Shown piece after piece: positions 32,585-59,944 of a stretch of 64,000 nt of DNA. The DNA lies in the NCBI GenBank assembly GCA_964035545.1, contig OZ037771.1:11164480-11228479 (forward strand), in the 5' to 3' direction. This DNA comes from Bugula neritina (taxonomy: Eukaryota; Animalia; Bryozoa). The position numbers were made by a program, and so were the translations under genes. The first letter of the stretch is position 1. The number at the start of each line of letters is the position of its first letter. Below the pieces are notes generated by a model, which saw nothing but the letters and a program-made list of their open reading frames with translations, had not been told where the DNA came from and did not search any database.

Positions 32585-32878
32585 TCTGGTGCAGGTCTTT
32601 GTGGCATGACGTTCATTGCGTCATTTCCGCATATTTGTGCAGGTTCTTGTGGCATGGTATTCTGAGTACCATTTCTGCTGTTTTGTGCGGGTCCTTGTGG
32701 CATGACATTCATTGCGTCATTTCCGCATTTGTGTGCAGGTTCTTGTGGTATGGTATTCTGAGTACCATTTCTGCTGTTTAGTGCGGGTCCTTGTGGTATG
32801 ACGTTCATTGCGTCATTTCCGCATGTTTGTGCAGGTTCTTGTGGCATGGTATTCTGGGTACCATTTCTGCTGTTTTGT
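32585..32878. repeat. 96-bp tandem repeat (two 48-bp subunits), about 3 copies, inside the Copia element
   Basis: Minus-strand translation repeats MPQEPAQTCGNDAMNVIPQGPALNSRNGTQNT. Confidence 0.9.
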
Positions 32879-33690
32879 GTGCCGGTGTGTGTTCCGGTGT
32901 GTGTTACGGTGCGTGTGCCGGTGTGTGTTTCAGTGTGTGTGTTTCAGTGTGTGCGTGTCAGTGTGTGTTCTGGCGTGTGCGCCGGTGTGTGTTCCGGTGC
33001 GTGTGCCGGTGTGTGTGCCGGTGTGTGTTTCAGTGTGTGCGTGTCAGTGTGTGTTCTGGCGTGTGCGCCGGTGTGTGTTCCGGTGCGTGTGCCAGTTTGT
33101 GTGCCGGTGTGTGTTCCGGTCTGTGTGCCGGTGTGTGTTCCGGTCTGTGTGCCGGTGTGTGTTCCGGTCTGTGTGCCGGTGTGTGTTCCGGTCTGTGTGC
33201 CGGTGTGTGTTCCGGTGTGTGTTCCGGTCTGTGTGCCGGTGTGTGTTCCGGTCTGTGTGCCGGTGTGTGTTCCGGTCTGTGTGCCGGTGTGTGTTCCGGT
33301 GTGTTCCGGTCTTTGTGCCGGTGTGTGTTCCGGTCTTTGTGCCAGTGTGTGTTCCGGTCTTTGTGCCGGTGTGTGTTCCGGTCTGTGTGCCGGTGTGTGT
33401 TCCGGTCTTTGTGCCGGTGTGTGTTCCGGTCTTTGTGCCGGTGTGTGTTCCGGTCTTTGTGCCGGTGTGTGTTCCGGTCTGTGTGCCGGTGTGTGTTCCG
33501 GTCTGTGTGCCGGTGTGTGTTCCGGTCTGTGTGCCGGTGTGTGTTCCGGTCTGTGTGTCAGTGTGTGTTCCGGTCTTTGTGCCGGTGTGTGTTCCGGTCT
33601 TTGTGCCGGTGTGTGTTCCGGTCTTTGTGCCGGTGTGTTCCGGTCTGTGTGTGCCGGTCTGTGTGTGTACCGGTATGTGTGTCGGTGTGT
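32879..33690. repeat. 24-bp minisatellite CTGTGTGCCGGTGTGTGTTCCGGT (dimer of 12-mers) inside the Copia element
   Basis: Directly visible tandem array. Confidence 0.95.
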
Positions 33691-34425
33691 AGTACTATAT
33701 AGTGAGTAGTACTATATAGTGAGTAGTACAATATAGTGAGTACTGAGTAGTGTTGTATTGTGAGTAGTACTACATAGTGAGTGATACTGTGCAGTGAGTA
33801 ATACTATGTAAAGTGAGTAGTGCTGCCCAGTGAGTAGTACTGTGTACAGTGACCGAGTGATATTGTACAGTGAGTAATAGTAATACTGTGTGCAGTGTGA
33901 GTGAGTGGTAGTGTACAGTGAGCGATACTGCATAGTCACTATGATAGTGAGTGATACTGTACAGTGAGTAATAGTAATACTGTGTACAGTGTGAGTGAGT
34001 GGTAGTGTACAGTGAGCGATACTGCATAGTCACTATGATAGTGAGTGATACTGTACAGTGAGTAATAGTAATACTGTGTACAGTGTGAGTGATATTGTAC
34101 AGTGAGTAGTAGTAATATTTATATTGTGTACCGTGTGAGTGACACTGTAGAGTGAGTGAGTACTGAGTAGTAATAGTACTGTGTACAGTGTGAGTGACAC
34201 TGTAGAGTGAGTGAGTACTGAGTAGTAATAGTACTGTGTACAGTGTGAGTGACACTGTAGAGTGAGTGAGTACTGAGTAGTAATAGTACTGTGTACAGTG
34301 TGAGTGACACTGTACAGTGAGTAGTAGTAGTATTGTGTACAGTGTGAGTGACACTGTACAGTGAGTAGTAGTAGTATTGTGTACAGTGTGAGTGACACTG
34401 TACAGTGTGAGTGATTAGTATTAGT
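33691..34425. repeat. AGT/ACT-rich compound minisatellite (55-bp, 44-bp and longer units) inside the Copia element
   Basis: GACACTGTA recurs at 34141, 34196, 34251 and 34306 (55-bp period), then at 34350 and 34394 (44-bp period). Confidence 0.92.
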
Positions 34426-47332: not shown

Positions 47333-48288
47333 TCATTTCTTGGTATTATAATGTTTTTGCTGATTCAGGGCTTCTACAAGAGGAGAGTTGGAAAACTTCA
47401 TTGGGTCATCAAATATATGCACATACTGGTCAAAGTCCTTTAAGTGTTGTAGGAAATATTCTGGTAGAGATTGAGATTTGGGGCCAGATCTTTTCCTTCT
47501 CTTGAAGTCTTCACAATACTCCATTATCTCCTTGTCATTACAGCCATACACGCAGCACTCACACACTATACCTTGGGAGTCGCTTGGCGTGAAGCCACCA
47601 TGTTGACGCTTCTGCCGGAACAAGAACTCATTGGCCTTGGCGTGACTTTTGAAGACACTATTTGCTTCTGGTGTTTCTTGCTTGATGACTTGTTTAGCTG
47701 GAGTGTTGTTGAGCGAGGTTGAAACTGCAAAATAATGTTATAAAATTATTGTCTATTATAGTTGCAAATACGGCAATAAACTAAAACAGCAATCCTCAAC
47801 TTGAAAAATGATTACAAGGTTGTTTTAATTATAAACCTCTGACTCTTTACAGCAGATCTTTTTACATTCATAATTAACCATTTGATTTTAAAAAAATTGT
47901 AAATAAACTCAATAAACTACAGGATATATAAATTGTATTTCAGAGTTTATGTTGACAATATGTACACTAAATTTTCAAAGCAATTAAATGTAGTAAAATG
48001 ACTTATAAAACTGCTATACACATTTAAGTATGAAAAAACACATGTCTATTGTAGCAAGTATGAACTTGGTTTGTTATCCCCACCTGCTCGCTTTCTTCTG
48101 TTGGGTTGGTACCCGTAGCACTTGCTGAGAACGTAGTCCGTGAGTTCCCCGCCGCAGCGAGCCATTCGCCCGTGATAGCCACTTTTGATTTTGGCTTCTG
48201 AGCAGGTGTGCGTCAGTTTTGCTGTGGTGAAATTCAACAGCGTCAGCAGCATTGGTAGCATGCAGACAAACATTTTGACTGCAACCAT
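47333..48288 (-). CDS. Insulin-like peptide precursor A (8-Cys, molluscan-insulin type), 198 aa
   Basis: Exons 48084-48288 and 47333-47724 (phase-1 intron). Signal peptide; B chain HTC-x15-C-x11-C; RRKR; C peptide; RQKR; A chain QHGG...GIVCECCVYGCNDKEIMEYC; KRRKR; 51-aa tail. Confidence 0.94.
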
Positions 48289-48783
48289 CTGCAATTATAC
48301 AAACAGCTTTTTGTATTTCAAAGAGAACAACAAACAGCTATTAAAATATTTCTATATTTTAAAGTAAAAAACTAGCAATAAAAAGGTTTGTCACCCAATT
48401 GTAGGTATAGAAAGAAACATCCCATAGCTGTGATAATCAAAAAAATACTTGGTTACAAAGTTTTTAAAACGTAACTTTCCATCAATACTGTAGTCAACTA
48501 AACTAATTAATTACATTAATTAAATTAAATTATTTTGTATAATAGACATAAATTGTATGTTTTTGATAAAAACTAAATCATAATACTACTATCTCTAGCA
48601 TTGAAGTTTTAAGATTGATGATCAAAAATAGTAAGACTGCTGCATTTAAAAATACTTTGAAATTAATCAAAAGCAAATATTTTGCTGTACCATAATAAAG
48701 TAAATACCTTGATGTAAAAATATTTGATATGTGTTTCTTTAGTGTAAAATTTATGTATAATCAAAACAAGGTGTAAAGTTTTG

Positions 48784-48856
48784 CTTATATACTCCTAGCA
48801 ACCTATTATTCGATGTAAGTAGATAGAACGAAGTTTTGTTAGCCAATGAAATTGCA
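48784..48856 (-). promoter_or_regulatory. Putative core promoter of insulin-like gene A (TATA plus CCAAT)
   Basis: Minus-strand GTATATAAG at 48792-48784 and plus-strand AGCCAATGAAATTGCA at 48841-48856, near-identical to the motifs upstream of gene C. A 5'-UTR donor AAG|gtattt lies at 48708/48707. Confidence 0.6.
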
Positions 48857-50176
48857 GTCGTTAGTTTGAAGCTCTCAATAGACACAGCTTTTAGTTACTA
48901 CGTCACAAATATTATGTTTCTGGGTTTAGCAGTAAGCAGTTCAACGATGTTGTTCGCACATTTCCTATTTATTTCTATCATATGAGTATATGTAATTTTG
49001 TTATTACTTTCAAAAATTATTTAAAGTCTATTGGTATATCATTCATAAAGACTATTTTTTAAATGTCAAAATATTTAGAATACTTTAGAATCAGAAAAAT
49101 AATTTGTTATCTCTTTCATTAATTAATGTAATAACATTTTACTTTCATTGATTTGTAGATCTCTAAATAATAATGTTATATTATTTGTGTGCTGATGCTA
49201 TAATATTTAGTCTGATAAGTTACACTTTTTTAAATTGTATTAACATTTATTTGTTAATTTTACTATAAATTATGTTCCCCTTCAAAAAAAATTCTGCAGT
49301 ATAAAAGACAAATGCAATCAAAACACTTGCAGTGGTTATTTTATTTCAAGTTATTTCACTTTCAAATTAATTACTTTTACAATATTTCCTTCTAAATAAG
49401 TTTACAATAAAGTAATTTCCACGTTTTTGTTATTGCATGCGTTTATGGAATTATCAGCGTTAAAACTTTCGCAGAGTTATTGAAATGGTACAAAATAATA
49501 CATTTTAAAATCTTATTAGTTTTCCGTATTTTTTTGGTTACAAAAATCATTTTTTGAAATAAAAATGAAGTAGCTGTTGTATTATCTGTTGCAAAATTTA
49601 AAAAGTGAAATTTTCAGTTTATTATAGTAAGGTATGCTGCAAATCAGTAAAATAGCTAAATGAGCAAATAAAATAATATTTTACTGTTATTGACAAATTA
49701 CACACATATTATCTATTTAAGCTGTTCATTATCTGTGATTATTTTTCAAATTTTAAAGAATTTGGCATTCACATCTTTTTATGTTAACCAACCCTTTTAT
49801 TAATTGCAAAGGTTTAGTTGTACCAACATTTCTGTAACGCATTTCTCAAATCACTCAGATTCTTGTGTGAACCGAGATTTTCAGATAAATTAGTTGCATT
49901 AAAATTAGCATCAGGACGACTGCCTGTATTCCTGAAATGCTGGCAACAGTACAGCTCAGATTGTTGCTGTGCTGGTAAACAGGGGAGGTAAATAATCATT
50001 ATTTTCCCAAAACCAAGTAGATGACAAATATTTGCATGTCTAATGAGCATCAAGAACCTATATACAGGTAAACGGCAATGACAAGTAGCACTATAGTAAG
50101 ACTCGTGCAAGTTTATAGTCACCATCCTTGTGCGAAACCCCTTCTGGAAGAGGTTTTTTGCAAAATGGGCTGGGGA

Positions 50177-50302
50177 CTTATTCAGATGAAGCACAGGAGC
50201 AATTATGACTGGATGCTTTTCCTAATGCCTATGCAGGGTGTTGGAATCCGCAACTCCGTGTTTACAAAGCAAATGCTTTAACCCTAGACCACTGTTGCTC
50301 CC
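50177..50302 (-). mobile_element. tRNA-derived SINE copy 3
   Basis: Shares GCACAG...TATGACTGGATGCTTTTCCTAA...AACCCTAGACCAC with the other two copies. Confidence 0.65.
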
Positions 50303-50911
50303 ACAAGTAGCACTATAATAAGATATATCAGGTAATTGTTATTATGATTACATAATGAGTGCTTAGATTAAAGTTTCTGTAAACAAAATGAGAGCAGCTG
50401 CTGACAAATGAAAGTATTAATCATTTTTGCTAAGTTGCCACAAAGCTTGCCCCAACCCTGTGGCTATCTGTTTATATCCAATTGTCGAAATATTTTCTTG
50501 TACTCTCAAAATATACCAATTTTTTCAAACACGCAGCAGTGATATATGTTCGCAATTCATCTAAATCAGCTTATCTGTGTGCTACATATTCAACTTTTGT
50601 ATAGATTTCCTGGTGTATTTTCTACTTCAACACTGTACTGCAAGTAACCAACATTCTTATATTAATGTAACTGACCTCCAAATGCAAAGCAGCAGCAAAG
50701 TTGTAATTTCTAAAGAGGCAGAAACAAAACCATAAAAACTTATTCTTTTGTACAGCTGTGCAATTTTTTAAGTTTGTATTGTAGTTGAATTTTTGCAAAA
50801 ACAAAATTATGTTGTTGCAAATTTTGATAACTGATTACATCAAAACTTGATTTGTACAAGTTTGTAACCATAGAGCAGCCTATATGTTATAAGAAGTTAT
50901 GTTCTCTTCTG

Positions 50912-50913
<2 letters not shown>

Positions 50914-50983
<70 letters not shown>
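50914..50983. repeat. (TA)n microsatellite
   Basis: Directly visible. Confidence 0.97.
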
Positions 50984-50987
<4 letters not shown>

Positions 50988-53874
50988 AAGTTTAAAAATT
51001 CTTTTGGCTCATGGTTTCAAACTGTGCTAAAGAGTAGATATAATACAACACATACGTAGATAATAAGACCATAATAATCTATCTATTTGTTTACAAACAT
51101 AGGTGTGTTTACATTTTATTTTCAAGTTTACATTTAATTGGTAGATCTGCAGTTTATACAGAGAATTTTTCATGACAAACTGGGAATAATGTATAGTAAT
51201 TGTAAAATACCAAACATCGACATTCCTGTTCCTACGGCGTAATAACTGAGTATTTGCATTTATAGAAATGTTTAAATTACTGTTTTTAAACCTTTTTATA
51301 TCATTAATCTGTATAGGTACTCCCACTAGATTATTTATTGTATAAAAACCTGGTTATTATGTTCAAGCTGATATCTATCAACTAAATAGTAAACAATTTT
51401 TTTTACCCTCTCGACACCCTGTGTCATATTGTGGGCCATAACATCAAATGTCAGGCATTTTTACAAGTGTCTGCATTTCCTGTACAATGTTATGGTGCGC
51501 CAGGATCAAGCGCTGTTTGATTTTAAAAAGTTGCGACGGGCTCCTATTGGACAGAAAGACATTGCGTCAATTCATTGGATATAAATGTCCAATGAGGTGT
51601 CATAGATCGTACCTATAAATAAAAAACTTTGAGAGCTTCAGCACGGATACATCAAAAGTGGCTGACATTTTACGTGCTGGAAGCTGCTGTTATTATTGTT
51701 ACTTAGCTCCTAGTTGCTGTTTACTCATCTGGTTGCTAAACAGAATGATTTAAGAGTACCACCCTTCAAAACTTTTAAATGTGACCTCATTTCTGGAACT
51801 ATTTATAGCTCTGTTTGCACTTGCGCAAAACTCTGTTGATTTTTGTTTACCATGCATATACTGAGCTGCAGTTTTATATAGAAATAATCAAGTATAGGCA
51901 TTAAATAATAGTGAATATTTAGAAAATGCAAGGAATTTAATATTGTATGTGTAGTACGCTTGAAACTAAGCAAATATCAAGATTTCAATTCATGATGTCT
52001 TGGTGAAACAAAATACAAAAGCAATCTAAATTCGGAGTACTTTATTACATTCATCTGCGATGTTTTACTCTGTTGCTAAAAGTTGAAGTTAATATATTTC
52101 GTAAAAAATTAAATATGAAAGCCAGCATTATATATGTTGCGTGAGATAACATATATTGCAAATGCTAACACTTGTAATAAACTTTTCAACTTCATAACAG
52201 TTATTTGGGTGCTTTGTGAATAGATCTGATGATTTCTTGGCCCATTACCATTGTTTGGTTAAACATTTGTTAACTAATAAGTGAATTGTTGGGGGAGTTT
52301 CTATAAGTAATAAATTTGACTATAACAAAGTAAACTAATTAAGAAGTAATGCAATGCATTAAGTATGTTTTTATTTAGAATCTAACGTTTTTTAGAAAAT
52401 ATTTAAGCCACTTGCTGGTTGAAAAGTTCTATTGCGCTTCACTAATTGTTGTAAGCTTGATAAATGATTATAAATCAGTCAATTTTCTTTTAAATGTATG
52501 TTTTTGTTGGTAGGTTTACATCATTTGTAGAATGTAGTGTTAAACCAGAATTAAAAATTTGCTGTTCAATTTCTTCGCAACGTATGCAGCTCATCCATTG
52601 CAGTAGGTGACAATAATTTAATAACATAGAATAGATATCTGCAATAAGTGCTATTATAAATTCACTAGTCAGTTCATATAATTATACGCTACAGCAAACT
52701 ACTCATTTCATTTTAATATATGTTTACCTATTTATATAATTATACATGTCTTTGCTTGTCAGATGCAGTGGTATTTAGTGTAGTTATACATATATACGTC
52801 TTCCTTATACACAGAAATCTTGCAGACATGCAGTATAAATATATGTTGATATACTGCGAACATTTGATGGCTGATTCCATGTACAAACAAGGAAACTAGA
52901 GTAAATCTGTGCAGTGCTTTCACTAGATTTGTAATAGTATATTGATTTAATAACATTACATATAGTCATATACTATGATGCAAACTTAATGTTCCTGTCG
53001 CACCTCTAGACAAGTGCTTGGTAAAAGCATGCACTTTATTTTATGTCTATAAAAAGACTTTACAATCAAGAAGTGTTAGATAATAGTTATTCTTTATAAA
53101 CACAAATTTAGAACTGAACTGAACATATTATTGAATTCTTGTCCAAAACATTCATAGTGCAGTTTATTATCACAAGCTATATTTTTTCCAAAACTTGGTA
53201 GTTAGTTGTGTTCTCCTAAGTTTGTTTGTTTGTTTGTTTTTATTTTGTCATAGTAGGGTAAAAATTGATTGAGAAAAAAATAAACAAAATGACAGGGCCT
53301 ATGGCGCAATAGCACTGTAGCTAGTCGAGGCACCGAGCCATGAATGGTTGACAGTTATATAAGATTTTTGTTTAGGTTTTTGGAAGTTTTAGCAACTTAA
53401 AAAGTATTATTTTTTTATCTGGAAATTTGCCATTAGATGGTCTCTCAGGGCAAGTTTGAAACCAGCCTCCCTCCCCACAGCACGAATAGAACTAGGCAAT
53501 TTATTACATAGCGTCGAACATTGGAATTCCACTCTTCGTTGACCTGCAGCAGTTGATGATGGAGGAGTTTGTAGGCTGAACTCTGAAAATCTTGTGGGAT
53601 TGTTATGTGTGAGATGTGTTAGTTGAGAATAGTAAAGTGAATCTTATTATCAGATAATTATAATAATGTCCTTGAATTAAGAGGCTAGATGTGAATTATA
53701 GTAGCCATGCATGCAAAGCACAAGTTCCAGTAGCTAAGGGTTAGTTACTGGTTAGGGGTATAGCACCTGTGTGCTGGATCGCAGACTCGAACCACAAAGT
53801 CATTATTGAGACACACAGTCTATATACAGAGACGGTAAGAATTGTTATATTAGCAGTTTCTAGTCGGGGGTAAC

Positions 53875-53999
53875 TGAGTGCAGTAGTTTGAGGTTCTCAA
53901 GTTTGTGGTTGGGGGTTTCAATAACCGCACAATGAACTTCGATCAATAATCATTGAGTAACCGCAGCTCAAACTCGAAAACCTCAATTTGCTGCACTCA
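53875..53999. repeat. Imperfect inverted repeat, MITE-like
   Basis: TGAGTGCAGTAGTTTGAGGTTCTCAAGTTTG pairs with CAAACTCGAAAACCTCAATTTGCTGCACTCA. Confidence 0.65.
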
Positions 54000-54558
54000 A
54001 CTCGGAGCTGCTTATAAAACAATGTGAATTTTGTCTTCACTTGAGAGTTGTCTTGCCAAGTATATCTCAATGCAAGGAAATGCAATTTCTGTGAGCAGAC
54101 AACTTCCACTTACTTACTATTGTATGAACTTTCACAATATTAGGCCTATATAATTAAAATAATTGTGAACTCAAATAGTAATATTTGAAGAACAGTTGGT
54201 CAGCATATTTTACAGAACTTAATAGAGTTACAGGAGACATTTGCTGAGAATTACGTATTGACTGTAATATAAGTCACGAACTGGTGCTTGAAATTATTCC
54301 TGCTTTGTAGTATATCCATGAGTAAATAACTCCTCCTCAGTATAACAATAGTTCAGCAATTTTATACTTCTTTAAATTTTAATGTGTTTTGATTTAGTAA
54401 TGATAAGTTTTTGTATGGAAATCAGTTTCTAAAATAAAATATGTATAAAAAGATATTAGCCTACAGGCAATGTAATAGTATTGTTTATTTGCCTCAGAAT
54501 TTTCTTACTCATAACTTGACATGTTACTTCAGGTGCTTGATTTAAACTCATTCATGCT

Positions 54559-55465
54559 TCAAGCAAGAAGCTTTGTATGGCCGTTGATAGTTTTCTGCTT
54601 ATCTAAAGCTTGTACAATGGGCGTATTGACAAACTCTACCACACTGTCAAATTTTTCTGGGTAATTACTGATTTCATCCAGATATGTTTTAAAATAGTTT
54701 GGTATTGAATCTAACATTGAAGTTGATCTTTTCCTCCTCTTGAAATCTTCACAATACTCCATGATCTCGTTTTCATCACAGCCATGTATGCAACACTCAC
54801 ACACTATACCCTGGGAACTGCTGGGAATGAAACCAGCATAGTTCATGTAATCTTCGTACATCTCTCTGTTCCGCTTTCTGGGTGACAGGAACTTGTCAGC
54901 ATCAACCTTCTTGGTGAAGATCTTGCCGTTAGCAACATCATTCTGCCCCCTGGTGAGTAGTTTTTTCAAGGAGGTTTCTTCAGCCGTATCATTTGTGGTG
55001 TTAGCATCAGCAACTGCAGCATATAATGTTGAAAATATTACATCAGACTTTGTTAATATTCATAGAGACAACATAACTTCTGTAAAATTTGCTTTTATTC
55101 TAACTTAAAATCTATGAAACAATGATTCAAAATAGTTTAAAGAAGTTTTGGAAATTAAGCAAAGACATATTTTAATGGTTCCTTAAATTTTAGAAAATAT
55201 AATATTTGTAATAAATATACATTGGTGTATACACTTTTTAGTCATACTTAGTTTTTATTTTCTTACATTCTCGTTTGCTTGGGATGTAGCCGTAGCATCT
55301 GTTAAGGACATGATTCGTCAGACTTCCACTGCAAAGAGATTGTGAAGTACGATATCTACTCATGATCATGCTATAGGAACAGTTGTGGTCGTACCCTGCC
55401 TGGGTAGAGGTCAACAGCCCCAACAGCATCGCCCAGCTAAAGCAGTCTGCTAAGAGTTGAACCAT
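54559..55465 (-). CDS. Insulin-like peptide precursor B (8-Cys, molluscan-insulin type), 217 aa
   Basis: Exons 55267-55465 and 54559-55013 (phase-1 intron). Signal peptide; B chain HNC-x15-C-x11-C; KR; C peptide; RKR; A chain NREMYEDY...GIVCECCIHGCDENEIMEYC; KRRKR; 55-aa tail. Confidence 0.94.
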
Positions 55466-55845
55466 TTTCTTTAGCTGCATATAATCAAACAAAACATCAT
55501 TGCAGATTTAAGTACGTATTGTTTTTCCATAAAATTGCATTAGACCGCAAGTATAGAGTTTTTTATAAATAAATTATATCCCAAAAAAATTTAATGCTCC
55601 ATAAGTTTAATAAACATTTTTATAAGTTATTGCAACGTTTATAAAATATTTTTAAATTTATTTTCGTAAGAAATTTATAAAATTATTGTAAAAATGTATT
55701 TATATGTAGCTAGCCATAGCCCTAAGAGTTACTAAAAGTACTTCAGATAGTAACTATTTACACCCCTGAACTTAGGGGACTGCTGTGTGGTACTAAGAAT
55801 GTACTCTGTACATACTCGAGTGTATTGAACTCTGCAAGAAAATAG

Positions 55846-55899
55846 CTTTTATATTCACTGCCCAGTTGCAACTAAATGTATCTGACATTCAACCAATCA
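55846..55899 (-). promoter_or_regulatory. Putative core promoter of insulin-like gene B (TATA plus CCAAT)
   Basis: Minus-strand TATAAAAG at 55853-55846 and plus-strand AACCAATCA at 55891-55899; same arrangement as in the paralogues. Confidence 0.5.
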
Positions 55900-58703
55900 T
55901 ATTATAGAACCAGATTTCAAAGTTTCACTGCAACCAACGTAAAGTTTGCCTATAAACGTTTAAATAAAATAACCAGTACTTTAATTATATCATTTAATAT
56001 CTCTTTTATTCAAGTACTTAACAGCTGCATTAAAATTGTTTTGCAACAAAATAGAATATGTTAACTTTCCTAAAAGTGTAAAAAAGGGAATAAGATGCAT
56101 ATATCCGTCAAGGCAGCAGCGAAATGCTCCATAGCAAATTATAAAAATTTTCTAGGCACTTGATTTTGAAAAGTTTTAAGTTTGACCTTATTCATCTTTA
56201 TTATCCATGCATCTTTGTTTGTCTCTTGTACTAGCAACGTTGTACCATCCAAGGTCAACTTTCTGCTTTAATACTCACTGTCATCTAGTTTGTGTTCTTC
56301 TAATCCTTACCCCTAACACTTTGCTAATGTTTTCGTTGGCTTTTTGCTATTTACTTTAAGGCCATGCCACTCTATCCATTTCTTCTCACAACGTCCTTAA
56401 ATGACACCATGCTGGTCCTTGCTGTGAGATCTACAGCTGCAGATTAGCAATAGTCCCCCAGGTTTGTCTATATATAGGCATGAATATGGGTCAACATTAA
56501 CCCCTCACAATGCATCAATTGCTAACCACGTGATTAGTTATGTTTCATTAATATGAAATAGAACAGTCTTGTCACCTTTGAAATATAGGCACAGGTTAAT
56601 TAGCGGCTATAGTGAAATACAATAAGAACCATGTAACATATATCTATACATGGCAAACATTGCTTATCTCACATAAATCCATGTAGCGTACTTGTAGAAT
56701 ATCTGGTATATAAATAGCAGAACACCGACAATTCTTTATATGTAGATTATTACAATCTTTAAATCTTTATACAACGAACAATAGCTTAGCTGCATTGTCA
56801 TCAATAGCATTACAATAAGCATATCACTAAAATCATAATTTGTATTTGATTTTTTGTTCTGACAAGAGATTTTGTCAGAAAAAGAAGCACTTTTTTAATA
56901 ATGAAAATTATCTTGACTAAACTGAGATGAAAAAGAAAGGAAGGTTATAAACATATAATAGAAATGTACACTTTAAGAACTATACAAAGGCTGCAGATAT
57001 AGCACAGTGTGTGTAACAAGTGAACAAACAAGCCTGAAAACTGCTGCTTCATTTGGTTGTATATATAGAATATTTCAAAAAACAAAAATATACACAGTAA
57101 TTCGAAAATAGATTTGTAATTGCGACTTATATTATACATCTTGTGTAGATTTAATAATATTTTATCTTGTTCTTTAAATTCTTTGTCATCACTTTATTTA
57201 CACGGTATAGTTATATAATTACAAATGTGATTATGTAATCAAAGCTACTATGTTATAATAGTTCTAAATATAAACATAAAATGTGTTGCTTAAGCCTGGG
57301 TTCGTTATGTTTTGTGGTTTAATAATGCAGCTGAAGGTATACAATTTAATAAATGTGTGCTATAATTCTCACCTATTCTCACCTATCTCAGATTTGTCAT
57401 GTTCTGGTAGCGGTAGTGTGTGCTATAACTGATAAGTCTATAATAAGTGTGCTATAATAAGTTATTTAATATGTGTGTTATAGTGCTTTGATATTCTATA
57501 TTAATATGATTATATTATAAGAACATTATAATGACATTATAATGCATACCCATATATTAGAAATAATTGTAATAATTTATAAAATATTATAACAATAAAA
57601 CTATATTGTAGTAATTTTGGTATATTCAAATAATACTGGCGTATTATGTTGAAATTAATGGTATAATATAACATTATAATAATATTGGTATAGAATAATA
57701 TTTTAAAAAGTTGATTTAGTATAATATTGTTGGTACATTAGTACTGTATTAGTATAACTGCTGAAAATGCAGTAATGTAAAAAATGATGCCATATGTTTG
57801 GCTAGTAGCCTACTCATAATATATAATCTCTGTTTGTGCATGATAGCAATATGGGTATATTATAAATATATTTTCGTATAAGTTATTATTTTCCATAATA
57901 AGAAGACAACTACTTTGTATATAATAAATATAAAAATAATTTATTGATTACAAGTGATGACAACTCTAGAATCAGGTTTATAATTTGATGTGGAGTAAAA
58001 GCAAAAATTGATACAGTATAAATTTATAAGATATAATGTAGCATTTTGTAGACCAGTACAAAATAGTATAATATATCAAATTGTATTTTATGTTAATAAT
58101 GCTATGTTAGATTTTATTGCAATATAACTTATGTTGTCTTCTATTATTTATATTATTGTAAATTGTATTATATTACATTATTACATCATGTTATATTACA
58201 TGATAATATAATATTGCATTGCTTTATAATATATTACACTATATTACACTTCGCTATGCTTCATGGCATTATATGTCATATTATAATAGGTCAAAGGTCA
58301 ATAGTATAAAAATTTAGTGAACCTATCTTCATGATGGATTTAAACTAAAAACTGCATTATTAAAGATGTTTTTATTATAAACCACATTGGCTCATTGACT
58401 TATATACTGTCCATTGATTGTTTATTCACTCTTTATTTGTCCATTAGGTTGAAAAGCACAAATATAATATAAAGTATAAATATTATAGAATTTGGTGTTC
58501 TACTTTGGTAACTTTTAGTGATCAAGGTTTTTCAAAAACATAAATACCTTATTCAGCAGTATTGAGTCAAAATTTTTATCTAAATTTTATCCTAAGAAAA
58601 AAGTACAAAGTTCTTCTCATATGAGTCATGTAACAAATTTTGTAAAACAATAGCATTTTCTAGCAAATCATCTCTGTTCCAAAGTCTAGCTTCTTTTAAC
58701 TTG

Positions 58704-59556
58704 TTAGTTGTTGTGTTTAATGTTGATAGCCTTTTGTTGATTTAATGCTTGTACAATTGATGTCTTAGAAAACTCTACCGGATCTTCAAATATGTAGTCT
58801 TCCAAGCCGTCTTCAAAGAAATCACGAAAATATTCTGGCACTCGTGAGTTAGAAACTGATCTCTTCCTTCTCTTGTACTCACAATACTCACCAATTTCTG
58901 TGACAGTGCAGCCAAAGATGCAACATTCGCAAACAATACCATTCTGATAGGAATCTATTCCATCATAATTCCCATAATCTCCATAGTAATAGCTGTAAAT
59001 GTCAAACATGTTCCGTTTTGATAAAAAGTTGTTTGCATCCAGTCGACTTTTGAAGATCTTACTCTCAGCTTGGGAGTTGTGCTCTCTCGAAAGTAGTTTG
59101 TGTAAAAAGTTGATAGTTTGAGGAACAGCTACAAAAGAAATATTGATATAATATCTAATATGTTGACTAATAAACTTATAGCAAATTCAAATGCTTTTGG
59201 ATCAATAGAAGCAATAATGTATGACCCTTCCTAATACATTTATTCAAAATTAAAAGGTATTTAACAGGTGTGAGAATATACCATAAATTTGAAAAAAAAT
59301 ATTAGCTCTATCAAAATATTTTTTTTTGGTAACTGAGTATCCTATTTTCCTCACCATTCCGTCGTTTTCTTTTTTTTGCGTAGCATACTCTATAGACGTA
59401 AGCCATCAAATTGCCACTGCACTGAGATAGTGGCCCTCGAAAGCCACCTTGTATCATTGAAAGGGTACAGTTGTGTTCAAATCCTGCATTTGTCTCTGGC
59501 ATAATCTCACATATGATCATGCAGGTAGCACATGCCACCAACAACATAGACACCAT
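58704..59556 (-). CDS. Insulin-like peptide precursor C (8-Cys, molluscan-insulin type), 208 aa
   Basis: Exons 59355-59556 and 58704-59128 (phase-1 intron). Signal peptide; B chain HNC-x15-C-x11-C; KKRKRR; C peptide; KR; Tyr-rich A chain ...GIVCECCIFGCTVTEIGEYC; KRRKR; 51-aa tail. Confidence 0.94.
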
Positions 59557-59944
59557 TTTACCTGCATAATAAAACGCAGCAATGTTCACAAGACAAGAAT
59601 ACAGTGAAATAGTTGACATACAAGCATGCTACGCATCAAACACTAAATATATATAAGCTCAAAACAACAAATTATCTATCGTTTTGCATTATATATATAT
59701 GTCATTTAATACCAAAAGTGAAATGGTATACATGCACTGCAATGCTATACAATGTCATTACCAATCGTTTACAAAAGTGCTAAAATAACTAATCTTGTAC
59801 AAGCCTTGTATCAGTCCAGAAAAAGGAATAAGTCAACATGCAGTTTACATGCCTGCTGCTGAGGGTTAATACTGACAGCATTGTTTTACCTGAGAAACTC
59901 TGAAAGTTGGTATGAAGAAATGCTTTCTATGCACTGTCTCTCTT

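What the first reader, a model, noticed from the sequence alone, without database searches (positions are those of the whole stretch)
47336..58859. Conserved 51-55 aa peptide released after the A chain by an invariant KRRKR site
Seen in the sequence: each precursor continues past the A chain through KRRKR into a tail (47336-47488, 54562-54726, 58707-58859). The tails share S-x6/7-P[EN]YF...Y..[IK]F[DE][DS].. [EK]F..[ST][PS][IL]V[EQ]AL[ND][QK]QK. They are clearly better conserved than most of the C-peptide, have no Cys, have an aromatic/acidic central part and look amphipathic-helical. Established: classical insulins and most MIPs stop at the A chain, and IGF E-domains are basic and poorly conserved. 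I do not recognise this tail from any named family. Inference: it is a selected, co-secreted peptide (second hormone, granule-sorting or chaperone module, or Gla-bearing Ca2+/mineral-binding peptide).
Basis: partly seen in the sequence, partly recalled or inferred. Interest (0 to 1): 0.8.

Follow-up and report, generated by a model that had tools for sequence, protein, structure and literature searches.

The report
Conserved cleavable tail on bryozoan insulins
Three neighbouring insulin-like hormone genes of a moss animal (a bryozoan close to Bugula neritina) each encode, after a furin-type cutting site behind the A chain, a 51-55-residue helical tail that is kept by selection, occurs in all ten tail-type insulin genes found in this genome and in other bryozoans, and matches no described protein domain.

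Summary
Three tandem two-exon, 8-cysteine insulin-like genes each continue in the same exon through KRRKR into a Cys-free tail of 51-55 aa.

The tail is under purifying selection. Pooled dN/dS against B. neritina orthologues is 0.21 (p=1e-7), against 0.15 for the A-chain core. AlphaFold2 predicts it as helical (pLDDT 79-90).

The tail is not special to these three genes:
- This genome has at least 10 genes with a tail.
- About 40 of the 70 clusters found in an exhaustive profile search carry it.
- Of the 20 clusters looked up, every one that has a name is bryozoan (Bugula neritina BnILP-C/D, Watersipora subatra).

Across 45 precursors the furin P1 Arg and one tail Lys are invariant, like the cysteines. 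The RACE-cloned BnILP-C cDNA keeps the tail. The 2016 paper that reported that cDNA calls the precursors plain B-C-A. The tail has no Pfam or PDB relative.

Best reading: an IGF-E-domain-like, furin-released C-terminal pro-domain. It is the first module of a longer helical domain seen in paralogues. Whether it acts before cleavage (folding or sorting) or afterwards as a free peptide is still open. The Gla/mineral-binding idea has no specific support.

The scan found this before on other DNA of this genome (note s1-472051, contig C3 cluster). I reproduced that independently.

No RNA reads could be obtained.

The parts
47336..47488 (-). g1 tail, 51 aa (SGPKSQSLPEYF...NQQKHYNTKK). Motif 1 is at 47464..47432 and motif 2 (SPLVEALNQQKHYN) at 47386..47345. 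The stop codon is at 47335..47333.
   Evidence: It is 92% identical to the tail of B. neritina BnILP-C. An AATAAA lies 1 nt and another 27 nt after the stop.
47489..47503 (-). g1 KRRKR furin-type site
   Evidence: P1 Arg is present in 45/45 and P4 Arg in 44/45 family members.
47504..47605 (-). g1 A chain. An N-terminal extension (QHGGFTPSDSQ) precedes the core GIVCECCVYGCNDKEIMEYCEDF.
   Evidence: (PF00049, 16.9 bits, below the cut-off)
47606..47724 (-). g1 exon 2 start: the remainder of the C-peptide, ending in VFKSHAKANEFLFRQKR
48084..48288 (-). g1 exon 1: signal peptide, B chain (3 Cys), RRKR and the start of the C-peptide. The donor is GT at 48083 and the intron is phase 1.
54562..54726 (-). 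g2 tail, 55 aa. Motif 1 is at 54702..54670 and motif 2 (TPIVQALDKQKTIN) at 54624..54583. The stop codon is at 54561..54559.
   Evidence: The orthologue in L005-L007 is 77% identical in the tail. An AATAAA lies 69 nt after the stop.
54727..54741 (-). g2 KRRKR furin-type site
54742..54870 (-). g2 A chain with a Tyr/acid-rich N-terminal extension
   Evidence: (PF00049, 21.8 bits)
54871..55013 (-). g2 exon 2 start: the remainder of the C-peptide, ending in IFTKKVDADKFLSPRKR
55267..55480 (-). g2 exon 1: signal peptide and B chain
58707..58859 (-). g3 tail, 51 aa. Motif 1 is at 58838..58806 and motif 2 (TSIVQALNQQKAIN) at 58763..58722. The stop codon is at 58706..58704.
   Evidence: The orthologue P0020/L020 is 88% identical in the tail and differs by one in-frame 4-codon indel.
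58860..58874 (-). g3 KRRKR furin-type site
58875..59012 (-). g3 A chain with a Tyr-rich N-terminal extension
59013..59128 (-). g3 exon 2 start: the remainder of the C-peptide, ending in IFKSRLDANNFLSKR
59355..59619 (-). g3 exon 1: signal peptide and B chain. The start codon is the ATG at 59619 or the one at 59556.

Best explanation
The tails are the C-terminal pro-domain of bryozoan insulin-like peptide precursors. In position and processing they are the analogue of the E domain of IGF precursors.

Each gene encodes, in order: signal peptide, B chain, C-peptide flanked by dibasic sites, an 8-Cys-type A chain, R-R-[KR]-R, and the tail.

Shown here:
- The tail is translated in the same terminal exon as the A chain.
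- It is under purifying selection about as strong as that on the A-chain core.
- It is predicted to form two to three helices, the first of them amphipathic.
- It has two conserved motifs. Motif 1 is an aromatic/acidic helix. Motif 2 is 'P-[LIV]-[VI]-x-x-L-[NE]-x-Q-K-x-x-N-[IV]'. The motif-2 Lys is invariant and the Asn nearly so across 45 precursors of all paralogue groups.
- It corresponds to the first module of a longer four-helix tail. In long-form paralogues that first module is closed off by a dibasic 'NSKR'.

Inferred:
- A furin-like convertase cuts after the invariant P1 Arg in the late secretory pathway.
- Carboxypeptidase then trims the basic residues from the A chain.
- The tail leaves the cell in a 1:1 ratio with the hormone.

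Every paralogue keeps the same minimal epitope while the rest of the tail diverges. I therefore think the tail most likely docks to one shared partner and acts mainly before or at cleavage, in precursor folding, routing or latency, rather than each paralogue's tail being its own hormone.
For: Gene structure and reading frame.

Terminal exon: poly(A) signals lie 1-266 nt after the stops, and there is no GT[AG]AG donor inside the tails.

Selection:
- Pooled over three orthologue pairs, tail dN/dS is 0.21 (Fisher p=1.1e-7). The A-chain core is 0.15 and the N-terminal C-peptide 0.44.
- In a 14-member polymorphic cluster from another species, variable sites fall in the spacers (8 of 22 and 4 of 11). 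Few fall in motif 1 (1 of 16) or motif 2 (2 of 31).

Family-wide presence:
- The exhaustive profile search gave 70 hits, about 40 of them with a tail.
- This genome has 10 genes with a tail.
- Named members are B. neritina ILP-C and ILP-D and Watersipora subatra proteins.

The tail alone is significant.

Conservation: R152 45/45, R149 44/45, K197 45/45, N200 42/45.

Helical prediction: pLDDT is 79-90 in the short form and 83-90 for the motif-2 helix in the long form.

cDNA evidence: BnILP-C was obtained full-length by RACE (PMC4990251), and its deposited protein keeps the tail.

The E-domain concept and its removal by furin are described in PMC8286064.
Against: - There is no direct evidence here of cleavage, secretion or function.
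- There is no sequence homology to vertebrate IGF E peptides or to any Pfam or PDB entry, so 'E domain' is an analogy of position and processing only.
- Unlike IGFs, the C-peptide has convertase sites on both sides, so the hormone should be two-chain.
- Conserved cleavage sites on both sides of the module in long forms fit a released bioactive peptide just as well.
- Evidence for a single conserved helix face is only marginal (p=0.05).
- For g2 alone the tail's nucleotide identity equals that of the intron.
- The taxa of about half of the tail-bearing clusters are unknown.
Confidence: 0.6

Rival explanations
1. The released tail is itself a signalling peptide, a second hormone co-secreted with the insulin-like peptide and acting on its own receptor.
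For: - Conserved processing sites bracket the module: a furin site upstream in all members, and 'NSKR' downstream in long forms or the stop codon at the same place in short forms.
- It is under purifying selection.
- It has an invariant polar epitope, QK..N, which is typical of specific recognition.
Against: - Ten paralogues in one genome have tails only 35-46% identical within this cluster, and less across clusters.
- That would require many receptors, or one receptor that reads a very small motif.
- There is no amidation or other hallmark of bioactive peptides.
- No relative with a known activity was found.
Confidence: 0.22
2. The tail is not removed and forms part of the mature hormone, as a long D-domain-like extension of the A chain that changes receptor or binding-protein interactions.
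For: Veenstra notes that echinoderm and hemichordate IGFs have large charged C-terminal extensions without clear cleavage sites (PMC8286064). The type-II paralogues end in His/Arg-rich stretches like those extensions.
Against: The multibasic R-R-[KR]-R-S site is as conserved as the cysteines (45/45 at P1 and 44/45 at P4). That is hard to explain unless it is cut.
Confidence: 0.08
3. The tail is a gamma-carboxylated (Gla) Ca2+- or mineral-binding peptide.
For: - The C-peptides of g1 and g2 end in a motif with F at -16, A at -10 and L at -6 from the KR cut.
- The genome has an HTTM/gamma-carboxylase-type gene.
- The tails are acidic, with 6-9 Asp+Glu.
- Bryozoans calcify.
Against: - No Glu position in the tail is conserved across the family. 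The conserved residues are F/Y, L/I, Q, K and N.
- The first tail Glu lies about 49 residues after the recognition-like motif. That is outside the roughly 40-residue reach known for vertebrate carboxylase substrates (general knowledge).
- EF-hand-type PDB matches are only noise (E about 0.3).
- If carboxylation occurs, the A-chain Glu residues are the better candidates.
Confidence: 0.04
4. The tail is a neutral read-through without function, a stretch between the A chain and the first stop codon.
For: For g2 the raw nucleotide identity of the tail is no higher than that of the intron.
Against: - dN/dS is 0.21 with p=1e-7.
- Indels are in frame only.
- The tail is conserved between Bugula and Watersipora and across 10 paralogues.
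Confidence: 0.02

Closest known systems
E domain (E peptide) of vertebrate IGF-1/IGF-2 precursors and the C-terminal extensions of invertebrate IGF-like peptides (Veenstra, PMC8286064)
   Same: It lies C-terminal to the A (and D) domain. It is separated from it by a furin-type basic site. It is a pro-region that accompanies the hormone through the secretory pathway. The type-II bryozoan paralogues also end in Arg/His-rich stretches.
   Different: There is no sequence similarity: no match to PF08365 or any other Pfam family. The bryozoan tail is acidic/aromatic, helical and well conserved, not basic and poorly conserved. The precursors also have a cleavable C-peptide, so they are insulin-like two-chain precursors rather than single-chain IGFs.
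Bugula neritina insulin-like peptides BnILP-A to F (Wong et al. 2016, PMC4990251; ANW11186 = ILP-C, ANW11181 = ILP-D)
   Same: g1 is the orthologue of BnILP-C, 89% identical over exon 2. The order g3-g2-g1 is also found on B. neritina contig VXIV02001447. The deposited sequences contain the tail.
   Different: The paper describes the precursors as plain B-C-A with four disulfides. The passages on the insulin-like peptides that I read make no mention of the post-A-chain domain. The window's species differs from that assembly, at about 80-82% nucleotide identity over the loci.
Molluscan insulin-related peptides (MIPs)
   Same: Both have the GIVCECC-type A chain, eight cysteines, the same two-exon structure with an intron in the C-peptide, and a 'xANxFLxxKR'-type end of the C-peptide in related hits.
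   Different: In the profile search, hits that matched only the A chain stop within about 5-30 residues after it and lack motifs 1 and 2. The taxa of those hits could not be named here.
C-terminal amphipathic helices of granule proteins (carboxypeptidase E, PC1/3) used for sorting to regulated secretory granules
   Same: A C-terminal amphipathic helix on a secretory-pathway protein.
   Different: This is an analogy from general knowledge only. Membrane binding and sorting were not tested, and the bryozoan tail has an invariant polar QK..N epitope.

Membership tests
Insulin/IGF/relaxin superfamily (PF00049) | A-chain cysteine motif CC-x3-C-x8-C, B-chain cysteines, and a signal peptide | tested here: met
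   C-x-CC-x3-C-x8-C is present in all three exon-2 products, and exon 1 has 3 Cys and a hydrophobic N-terminus. The exon-wise PF00049 scores are 16.9-21.8 bits, just under the 23-bit cut-off. The orthologue is deposited as 'insulin-like peptide C precursor'.
Insulin/IGF/relaxin superfamily (PF00049) | A conserved phase-1 intron inside the C-peptide | tested here: met
   GT...AG introns of 226-359 nt, phase 1, are present in all three genes.
IGF-type precursor with E domain | A C-terminal pro-region after the A/D domain, preceded by a furin-type site | tested here: met
   KRRKR is followed by a 51-55 aa tail. R-x-[KR]-R is conserved in 44-45 of 45 precursors. Cleavage itself is not testable here.
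IGF-type precursor with E domain | Sequence homology of the pro-region to IGF E peptides (for example PF08365) | tested here: not met
   Pfam scans of the exon-2 products and of 18 tails at E up to 1 gave no IGF E-peptide family.
IGF-type precursor with E domain | A single-chain hormone with a short, uncleaved C domain | tested here: not met
   The C-peptides are 50-60 aa and flanked by RRKR/KR-type sites on both sides.
Vitamin-K-dependent Gla peptides | A carboxylase recognition propeptide (F -16, A -10, L -6) upstream of the Glu targets | tested here: inconclusive
   The pattern fits in g1 and g2, and in g3 the register is 2 residues shorter. It sits in the C-peptide, not the tail. Its function was not tested.
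Vitamin-K-dependent Gla peptides | Conserved Glu residues in the candidate Gla domain (here, the tail) | tested here: not met
   No tail column is a conserved Glu. The conserved residues are F/Y, L/I, Q, K and N.
Vitamin-K-dependent Gla peptides | A gamma-carboxylase gene in the genome | tested here: met
   HTTM (PF05090) exons score above the cut-off at G000 C2:15.960-15.966 Mb. Orthology to GGCX was not checked further.
Bryozoan ILP post-A-chain domain (undescribed; defined here) | Furin site, then motif 1 ([DE]x[FLI][YF]xx[LI][DE]), then motif 2 (Lx[NE]xQKxxN[IV]) | tested here: met
   All three window genes have it. The alignments are A2-A5. The tail-only HMM beats the decoys.

The most novel reading that the evidence does not exclude
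The conserved module (motif 1 and motif 2, with the invariant QK..N epitope) is a distinct bioactive entity. It could be a co-secreted hormone with its own receptor. Or it could be a latency/chaperone helix that binds the insulin core or its receptor until furin frees it. Either way, bryozoan insulin genes would be two-product genes, and this would be a new peptide family restricted to, or originating in, Bryozoa.
Probability: 0.2. Interest if true: 0.75.

Novelty: new variant of a known kind. Interest (0 to 1): 0.45.

Why it matters
Insulin-superfamily precursors are a textbook case of pro-hormone architecture. Regions outside the B and A chains are usually taken to be poorly conserved spacers.

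Here a whole phylum-level gene family keeps a structured post-A-chain domain behind a furin site, with at least 10 copies in one genome. One Lys in that domain is as invariant as the cysteines. This suggests a function added to insulin biosynthesis or signalling in bryozoans: folding, routing, latency, or a second peptide.

Practical consequences:
- It gives a clean marker (a profile) for annotating bryozoan ILP genes.
- It corrects the published B-C-A description.
- It offers a comparison for the debated roles of IGF E peptides.

The sequences were already public, and the function is still only inferred.

Tried and rejected
- Plus-strand reading gives only stops.
- Pfam on the exon products and on 18 tails gave only sub-threshold noise: ApoLp-III, POX and others.
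- A PDB profile search with the tails gave a best E of 0.3 (calcineurin B/troponin C EF-hands), which I rejected as noise. No insulin or IGF receptor chain appeared.
- Foldseek of the full model against PDB gave nothing below E=6.
- ESM Atlas by features gave no usable hit.
- The word-indexed protein search with single and profile queries added only Watersipora and unnamed contigs.
- The conservation-moment test for a single conserved helix face was not significant for helix 1 (p=0.58) and marginal for the motif-2 helix (p=0.05).
- Paralogue dN/dS was unusable because synonymous sites are saturated, so orthologue pairs were used instead.
- Literature searches for a described bryozoan or lophotrochozoan insulin tail found none.
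Work was done exon by exon, and the natural full-length orthologue P0019 was used for folding.


Full report
**Observation.** On the plus strand the three intervals contain only stop-ridden frames.

Each tail is the end of an open exon that also encodes the end of a C-peptide, an A chain of the GIVCECC...C-x8-C type, and KRRKR. Reading the DNA gives three tandem two-exon genes:
- g1: exon 1 at 48288..48084, exon 2 at 47724..47333
- g2: exon 1 at 55480..55267, exon 2 at 55013..54559
- g3: exon 1 at 59619..59355, exon 2 at 59128..58704

All three have GT-AG introns in phase 1 inside the C-peptide. Exon 1 carries a signal peptide and a B chain with three cysteines. With five in the A chain, that makes eight in all.

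tblastn finds no further copy in the window. Poly(A) signals lie 1-266 nt after the stops, and no GT[AG]AG donor lies within the tails. The tail is therefore the true C-terminus in the terminal exon. All searches were exon by exon, and the natural full-length orthologue was used where a whole precursor was needed.

**Whose genes these are.** The word-indexed search found an 85%-identical protein and a 36%-identical one that also carries KRRKR plus a tail ending in PLIQLLEKQKEI. An exhaustive profile search with the A chain plus tail (A1) returned 70 representatives at E<=1e-3. About 40 of them match through to the end of the tail.

Twenty of the clusters were looked up. Every one that carries a name is bryozoan:
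- Bugula neritina 'insulin-like peptide C precursor' (ANW11186, the g1 orthologue)
- Bugula neritina 'insulin-like peptide D precursor' (ANW11181)
- B. neritina genome models
- uncharacterised proteins of Watersipora subatra

The B. neritina assembly contig VXIV02001447 carries the same g3-g2-g1 order, at about 80-82% nucleotide identity. The window therefore comes from a bryozoan close to, but not identical with, that B. neritina. It is not a mollusc.

**The tail is a family-wide domain.** A profile search of the window's own 216-Mb genome finds ten genes with a tail: the three here, six in tandem on contig C3 and one on C6.

Alignments of 38-46 precursors (A2, A4, A5) show one common architecture after the A chain:
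- a multibasic site, R-R-[KR]-R-S
- a variable spacer
- motif 1, [DE]-x-[FLI]-[YF]-x-x-[LI]-[DE]
- an acidic spacer
- motif 2, P-[LIV]-[VI]-x-x-L-[NE]-x-Q-K-x-x-N-[IV]

Column counts over 45 sequences:

| Position | Count |
|---|---|
| P1 Arg | 45/45 |
| P4 Arg | 44/45 |
| motif-2 Lys | 45/45 |
| motif-2 Asn | 42/45 |

These are on a par with the cysteines.

Some paralogues continue after motif 2 with a dibasic 'NSKR' and two more helices. These are long forms such as L011, L015 and Watersipora P0026. Others end in a His/Arg-rich stretch (type II). The three window genes are short forms that stop 3-7 residues after the motif-2 Asn. That is close to where the long forms place their dibasic site, about 8-9 residues after the Asn.

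**More than chance, and under selection.** An HMM built only from the three window tails was run against the post-A-chain parts of other proteins and 36,800 shuffled decoys. It scored BnILP-D-type, P0023-type and P0003-type tails at 18-23.5 bits, above every decoy (maximum 16.7). Watersipora P0026 scored 13.5 bits, with one decoy above it.

Synonymous sites are saturated among the three paralogues. Even so, tail-core amino-acid identity (41-54%) exceeds that of the N-terminal C-peptide (14-33%). It is similar to or a little above that of the C-terminal C-peptide motif (33-47%).

Orthologue pairs with B. neritina DNA (L006, L020, L023) give the following pooled Nei-Gojobori counts:

| Region | dN/dS | Note |
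|---|---|---|
| Tail | 0.21 | 26 non-synonymous over 370 sites, 27 synonymous over 95 sites; p=1.1e-7 |
| A-chain core | 0.15 | |
| C-terminal C-peptide motif | 0.30 | |
| N-terminal C-peptide | 0.44 | |

Raw nucleotide identity is a weaker signal:

| Gene | Tail | Intron |
|---|---|---|
| g1 | 0.889 | 0.808 |
| g2 | 0.867 | 0.873 |
| g3 | 0.922 | 0.858 |

All tail indels are multiples of three, whereas the introns carry 5-28 gap columns.

In a cluster of 14 near-identical sequences from another species, amino-acid polymorphisms concentrate in the spacers (8 of 22 and 4 of 11 sites). They spare motif 1 (1 of 16), motif 2 (2 of 31) and the A chain (1 of 36).

**Structure.** AlphaFold2 on the natural full-length g1 orthologue, with the family alignment, gives helices at tail residues 162-179, 181-185 and 188-202. 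Their pLDDT is 79-90, higher than in the insulin core. The long-form Watersipora precursor gives an all-helical tail, and its most confident helix (pLDDT 83-90) is motif 2.

The first helix is amphipathic, with a moment of 0.50-0.56 that is reached by 1-4% of shuffles. Overall pTM is low (0.30-0.35) and I could not inspect contacts. Whether the tail packs on the hormone core is therefore unknown. Foldseek against PDB found nothing.

**Comparison with what is known.** No Pfam family, including IGF E-peptide families, and no PDB sequence matches the tail. ESM Atlas gave no usable hit.

Wong et al. 2016 (PMC4990251) cloned BnILP-A, -C and -D by RACE and described all six BnILPs as B-C-A precursors with four disulfides. 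The passages on the insulin-like peptides that I read do not mention a post-A-chain region. The deposited BnILP-C and BnILP-D proteins do contain it. That is cDNA-level evidence that the tail is not spliced out.

Veenstra (PMC8286064) defines the D and E domains, notes that the IGF E domain is removed by furin in the Golgi, and describes charged C-terminal extensions in invertebrate IGFs. This is the closest known concept.

The bryozoan domain shares the E domain's position and its furin-type junction. It differs in three ways:
- It has no sequence similarity to IGF E peptides.
- It is acidic/aromatic, helical and conserved rather than basic and variable.
- It sits on precursors whose C-peptide is flanked by convertase sites, so the hormone should be two-chain.

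Other literature searches found no description of such a tail.

**Mechanism.** Shown: the anatomy, the selection, the distribution and the predicted helicity.

Inferred: cleavage by a furin-like convertase at the invariant R-x-[KR]-R site, trimming of the basic residues, and co-release of the tail.

As to function, every one of ten diverged paralogues keeps the same small epitope while the rest of the tail drifts. That fits docking to one shared partner, such as folding or sorting machinery or the hormone core, better than ten separate hormones. I therefore favour a pro-domain role. The bracketing cleavage sites keep the 'second hormone' reading alive at about 0.2.

The Gla/mineral idea is unlikely:
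- The carboxylase-recognition-like motif (F -16, A -10, L -6 in g1 and g2) is in the C-peptide.
- The genome does have an HTTM-type gene.
- But no tail Glu is conserved, and the tail lies mostly beyond the usual reach of the recognition motif.
- The A-chain Glu residues would be the more plausible targets. That belongs to the sister finding s1-451009.

**Earlier scan notes.** Note s1-472051 reports the same kind of tail in the six-gene C3 cluster of this genome, and its follow-up reached a similar reading. I reached mine from independent searches and confirmed the C3 genes myself.

**Limits.**
- There are no peptide data.
- The taxa of roughly half of the tail-bearing clusters are unknown.
- Codon counts are small for any single gene.
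- The structure models have low pTM.

**Verdict.** This is a real, selected domain that the literature has left unremarked. It is a new variant of the E-domain kind in an already deposited gene family. Interest is moderate.

Noticed in passing
window 47656..47621, 54921..54886, 59057..59022 (minus strand): The C-peptides end in xFxxxxxA[ND]xFLxxxKR. In g1 and g2 this puts F at -16, A at -10 and L at -6 from the cut; in g3 the register is 2 residues shorter. 'ANxFL' is conserved across the 45-precursor family. An HTTM/gamma-carboxylase-type gene lies at G000 C2:15.960-15.966 Mb. This is the subject of sister finding s1-451009.
   Followed up: partly
window 54870..54811 and 59012..58941 (minus strand): The A chains carry long Tyr- and acid-rich N-terminal extensions before GIVCECC (g2 NREMYEDYMNYAGF..., g3 NMFDIYSYYYGDYGNYDGIDSYQN). 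They may be tyrosine-sulfation sites.
   Followed up: no
L023 about 3700 and L020 about 8190 (B. neritina GCA_010799875.2, contig VXIV02001447): The g2 orthologue in the published assembly has an A-run 2 nt shorter (AGTAAAAACCC becomes AGTAAACCC), which frameshifts its tail. Three other samples (L005-L007) are intact. The NCBI model KAF6033169 (345 aa) fuses the g2 and g1 orthologues and skips the g2 tail. This is probably an assembly or annotation artefact.
   Followed up: partly
window 32589-34422: A minisatellite block with strong GC and AT skew. It has a 24-nt unit repeated about 34 times at 32876-33690, flanked by 96/48-nt and 94/55-nt repeat arrays.
   Followed up: no
G000 C3:31640975-31663035 (L010, L011, L015, L017-L019) and C6:12124482-12124997 (L012): Seven more insulin-like genes with the furin site and tail: six in tandem on C3 and one on C6. 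They include long forms with an extra 'NSKR' and two further helices, and forms that end in His/Arg-rich stretches.
   Followed up: partly
window about 50950-50995 (plus strand): A (TA/TATA)-type microsatellite, visible as a YIYIYIY ORF in the ORF list.
   Followed up: no
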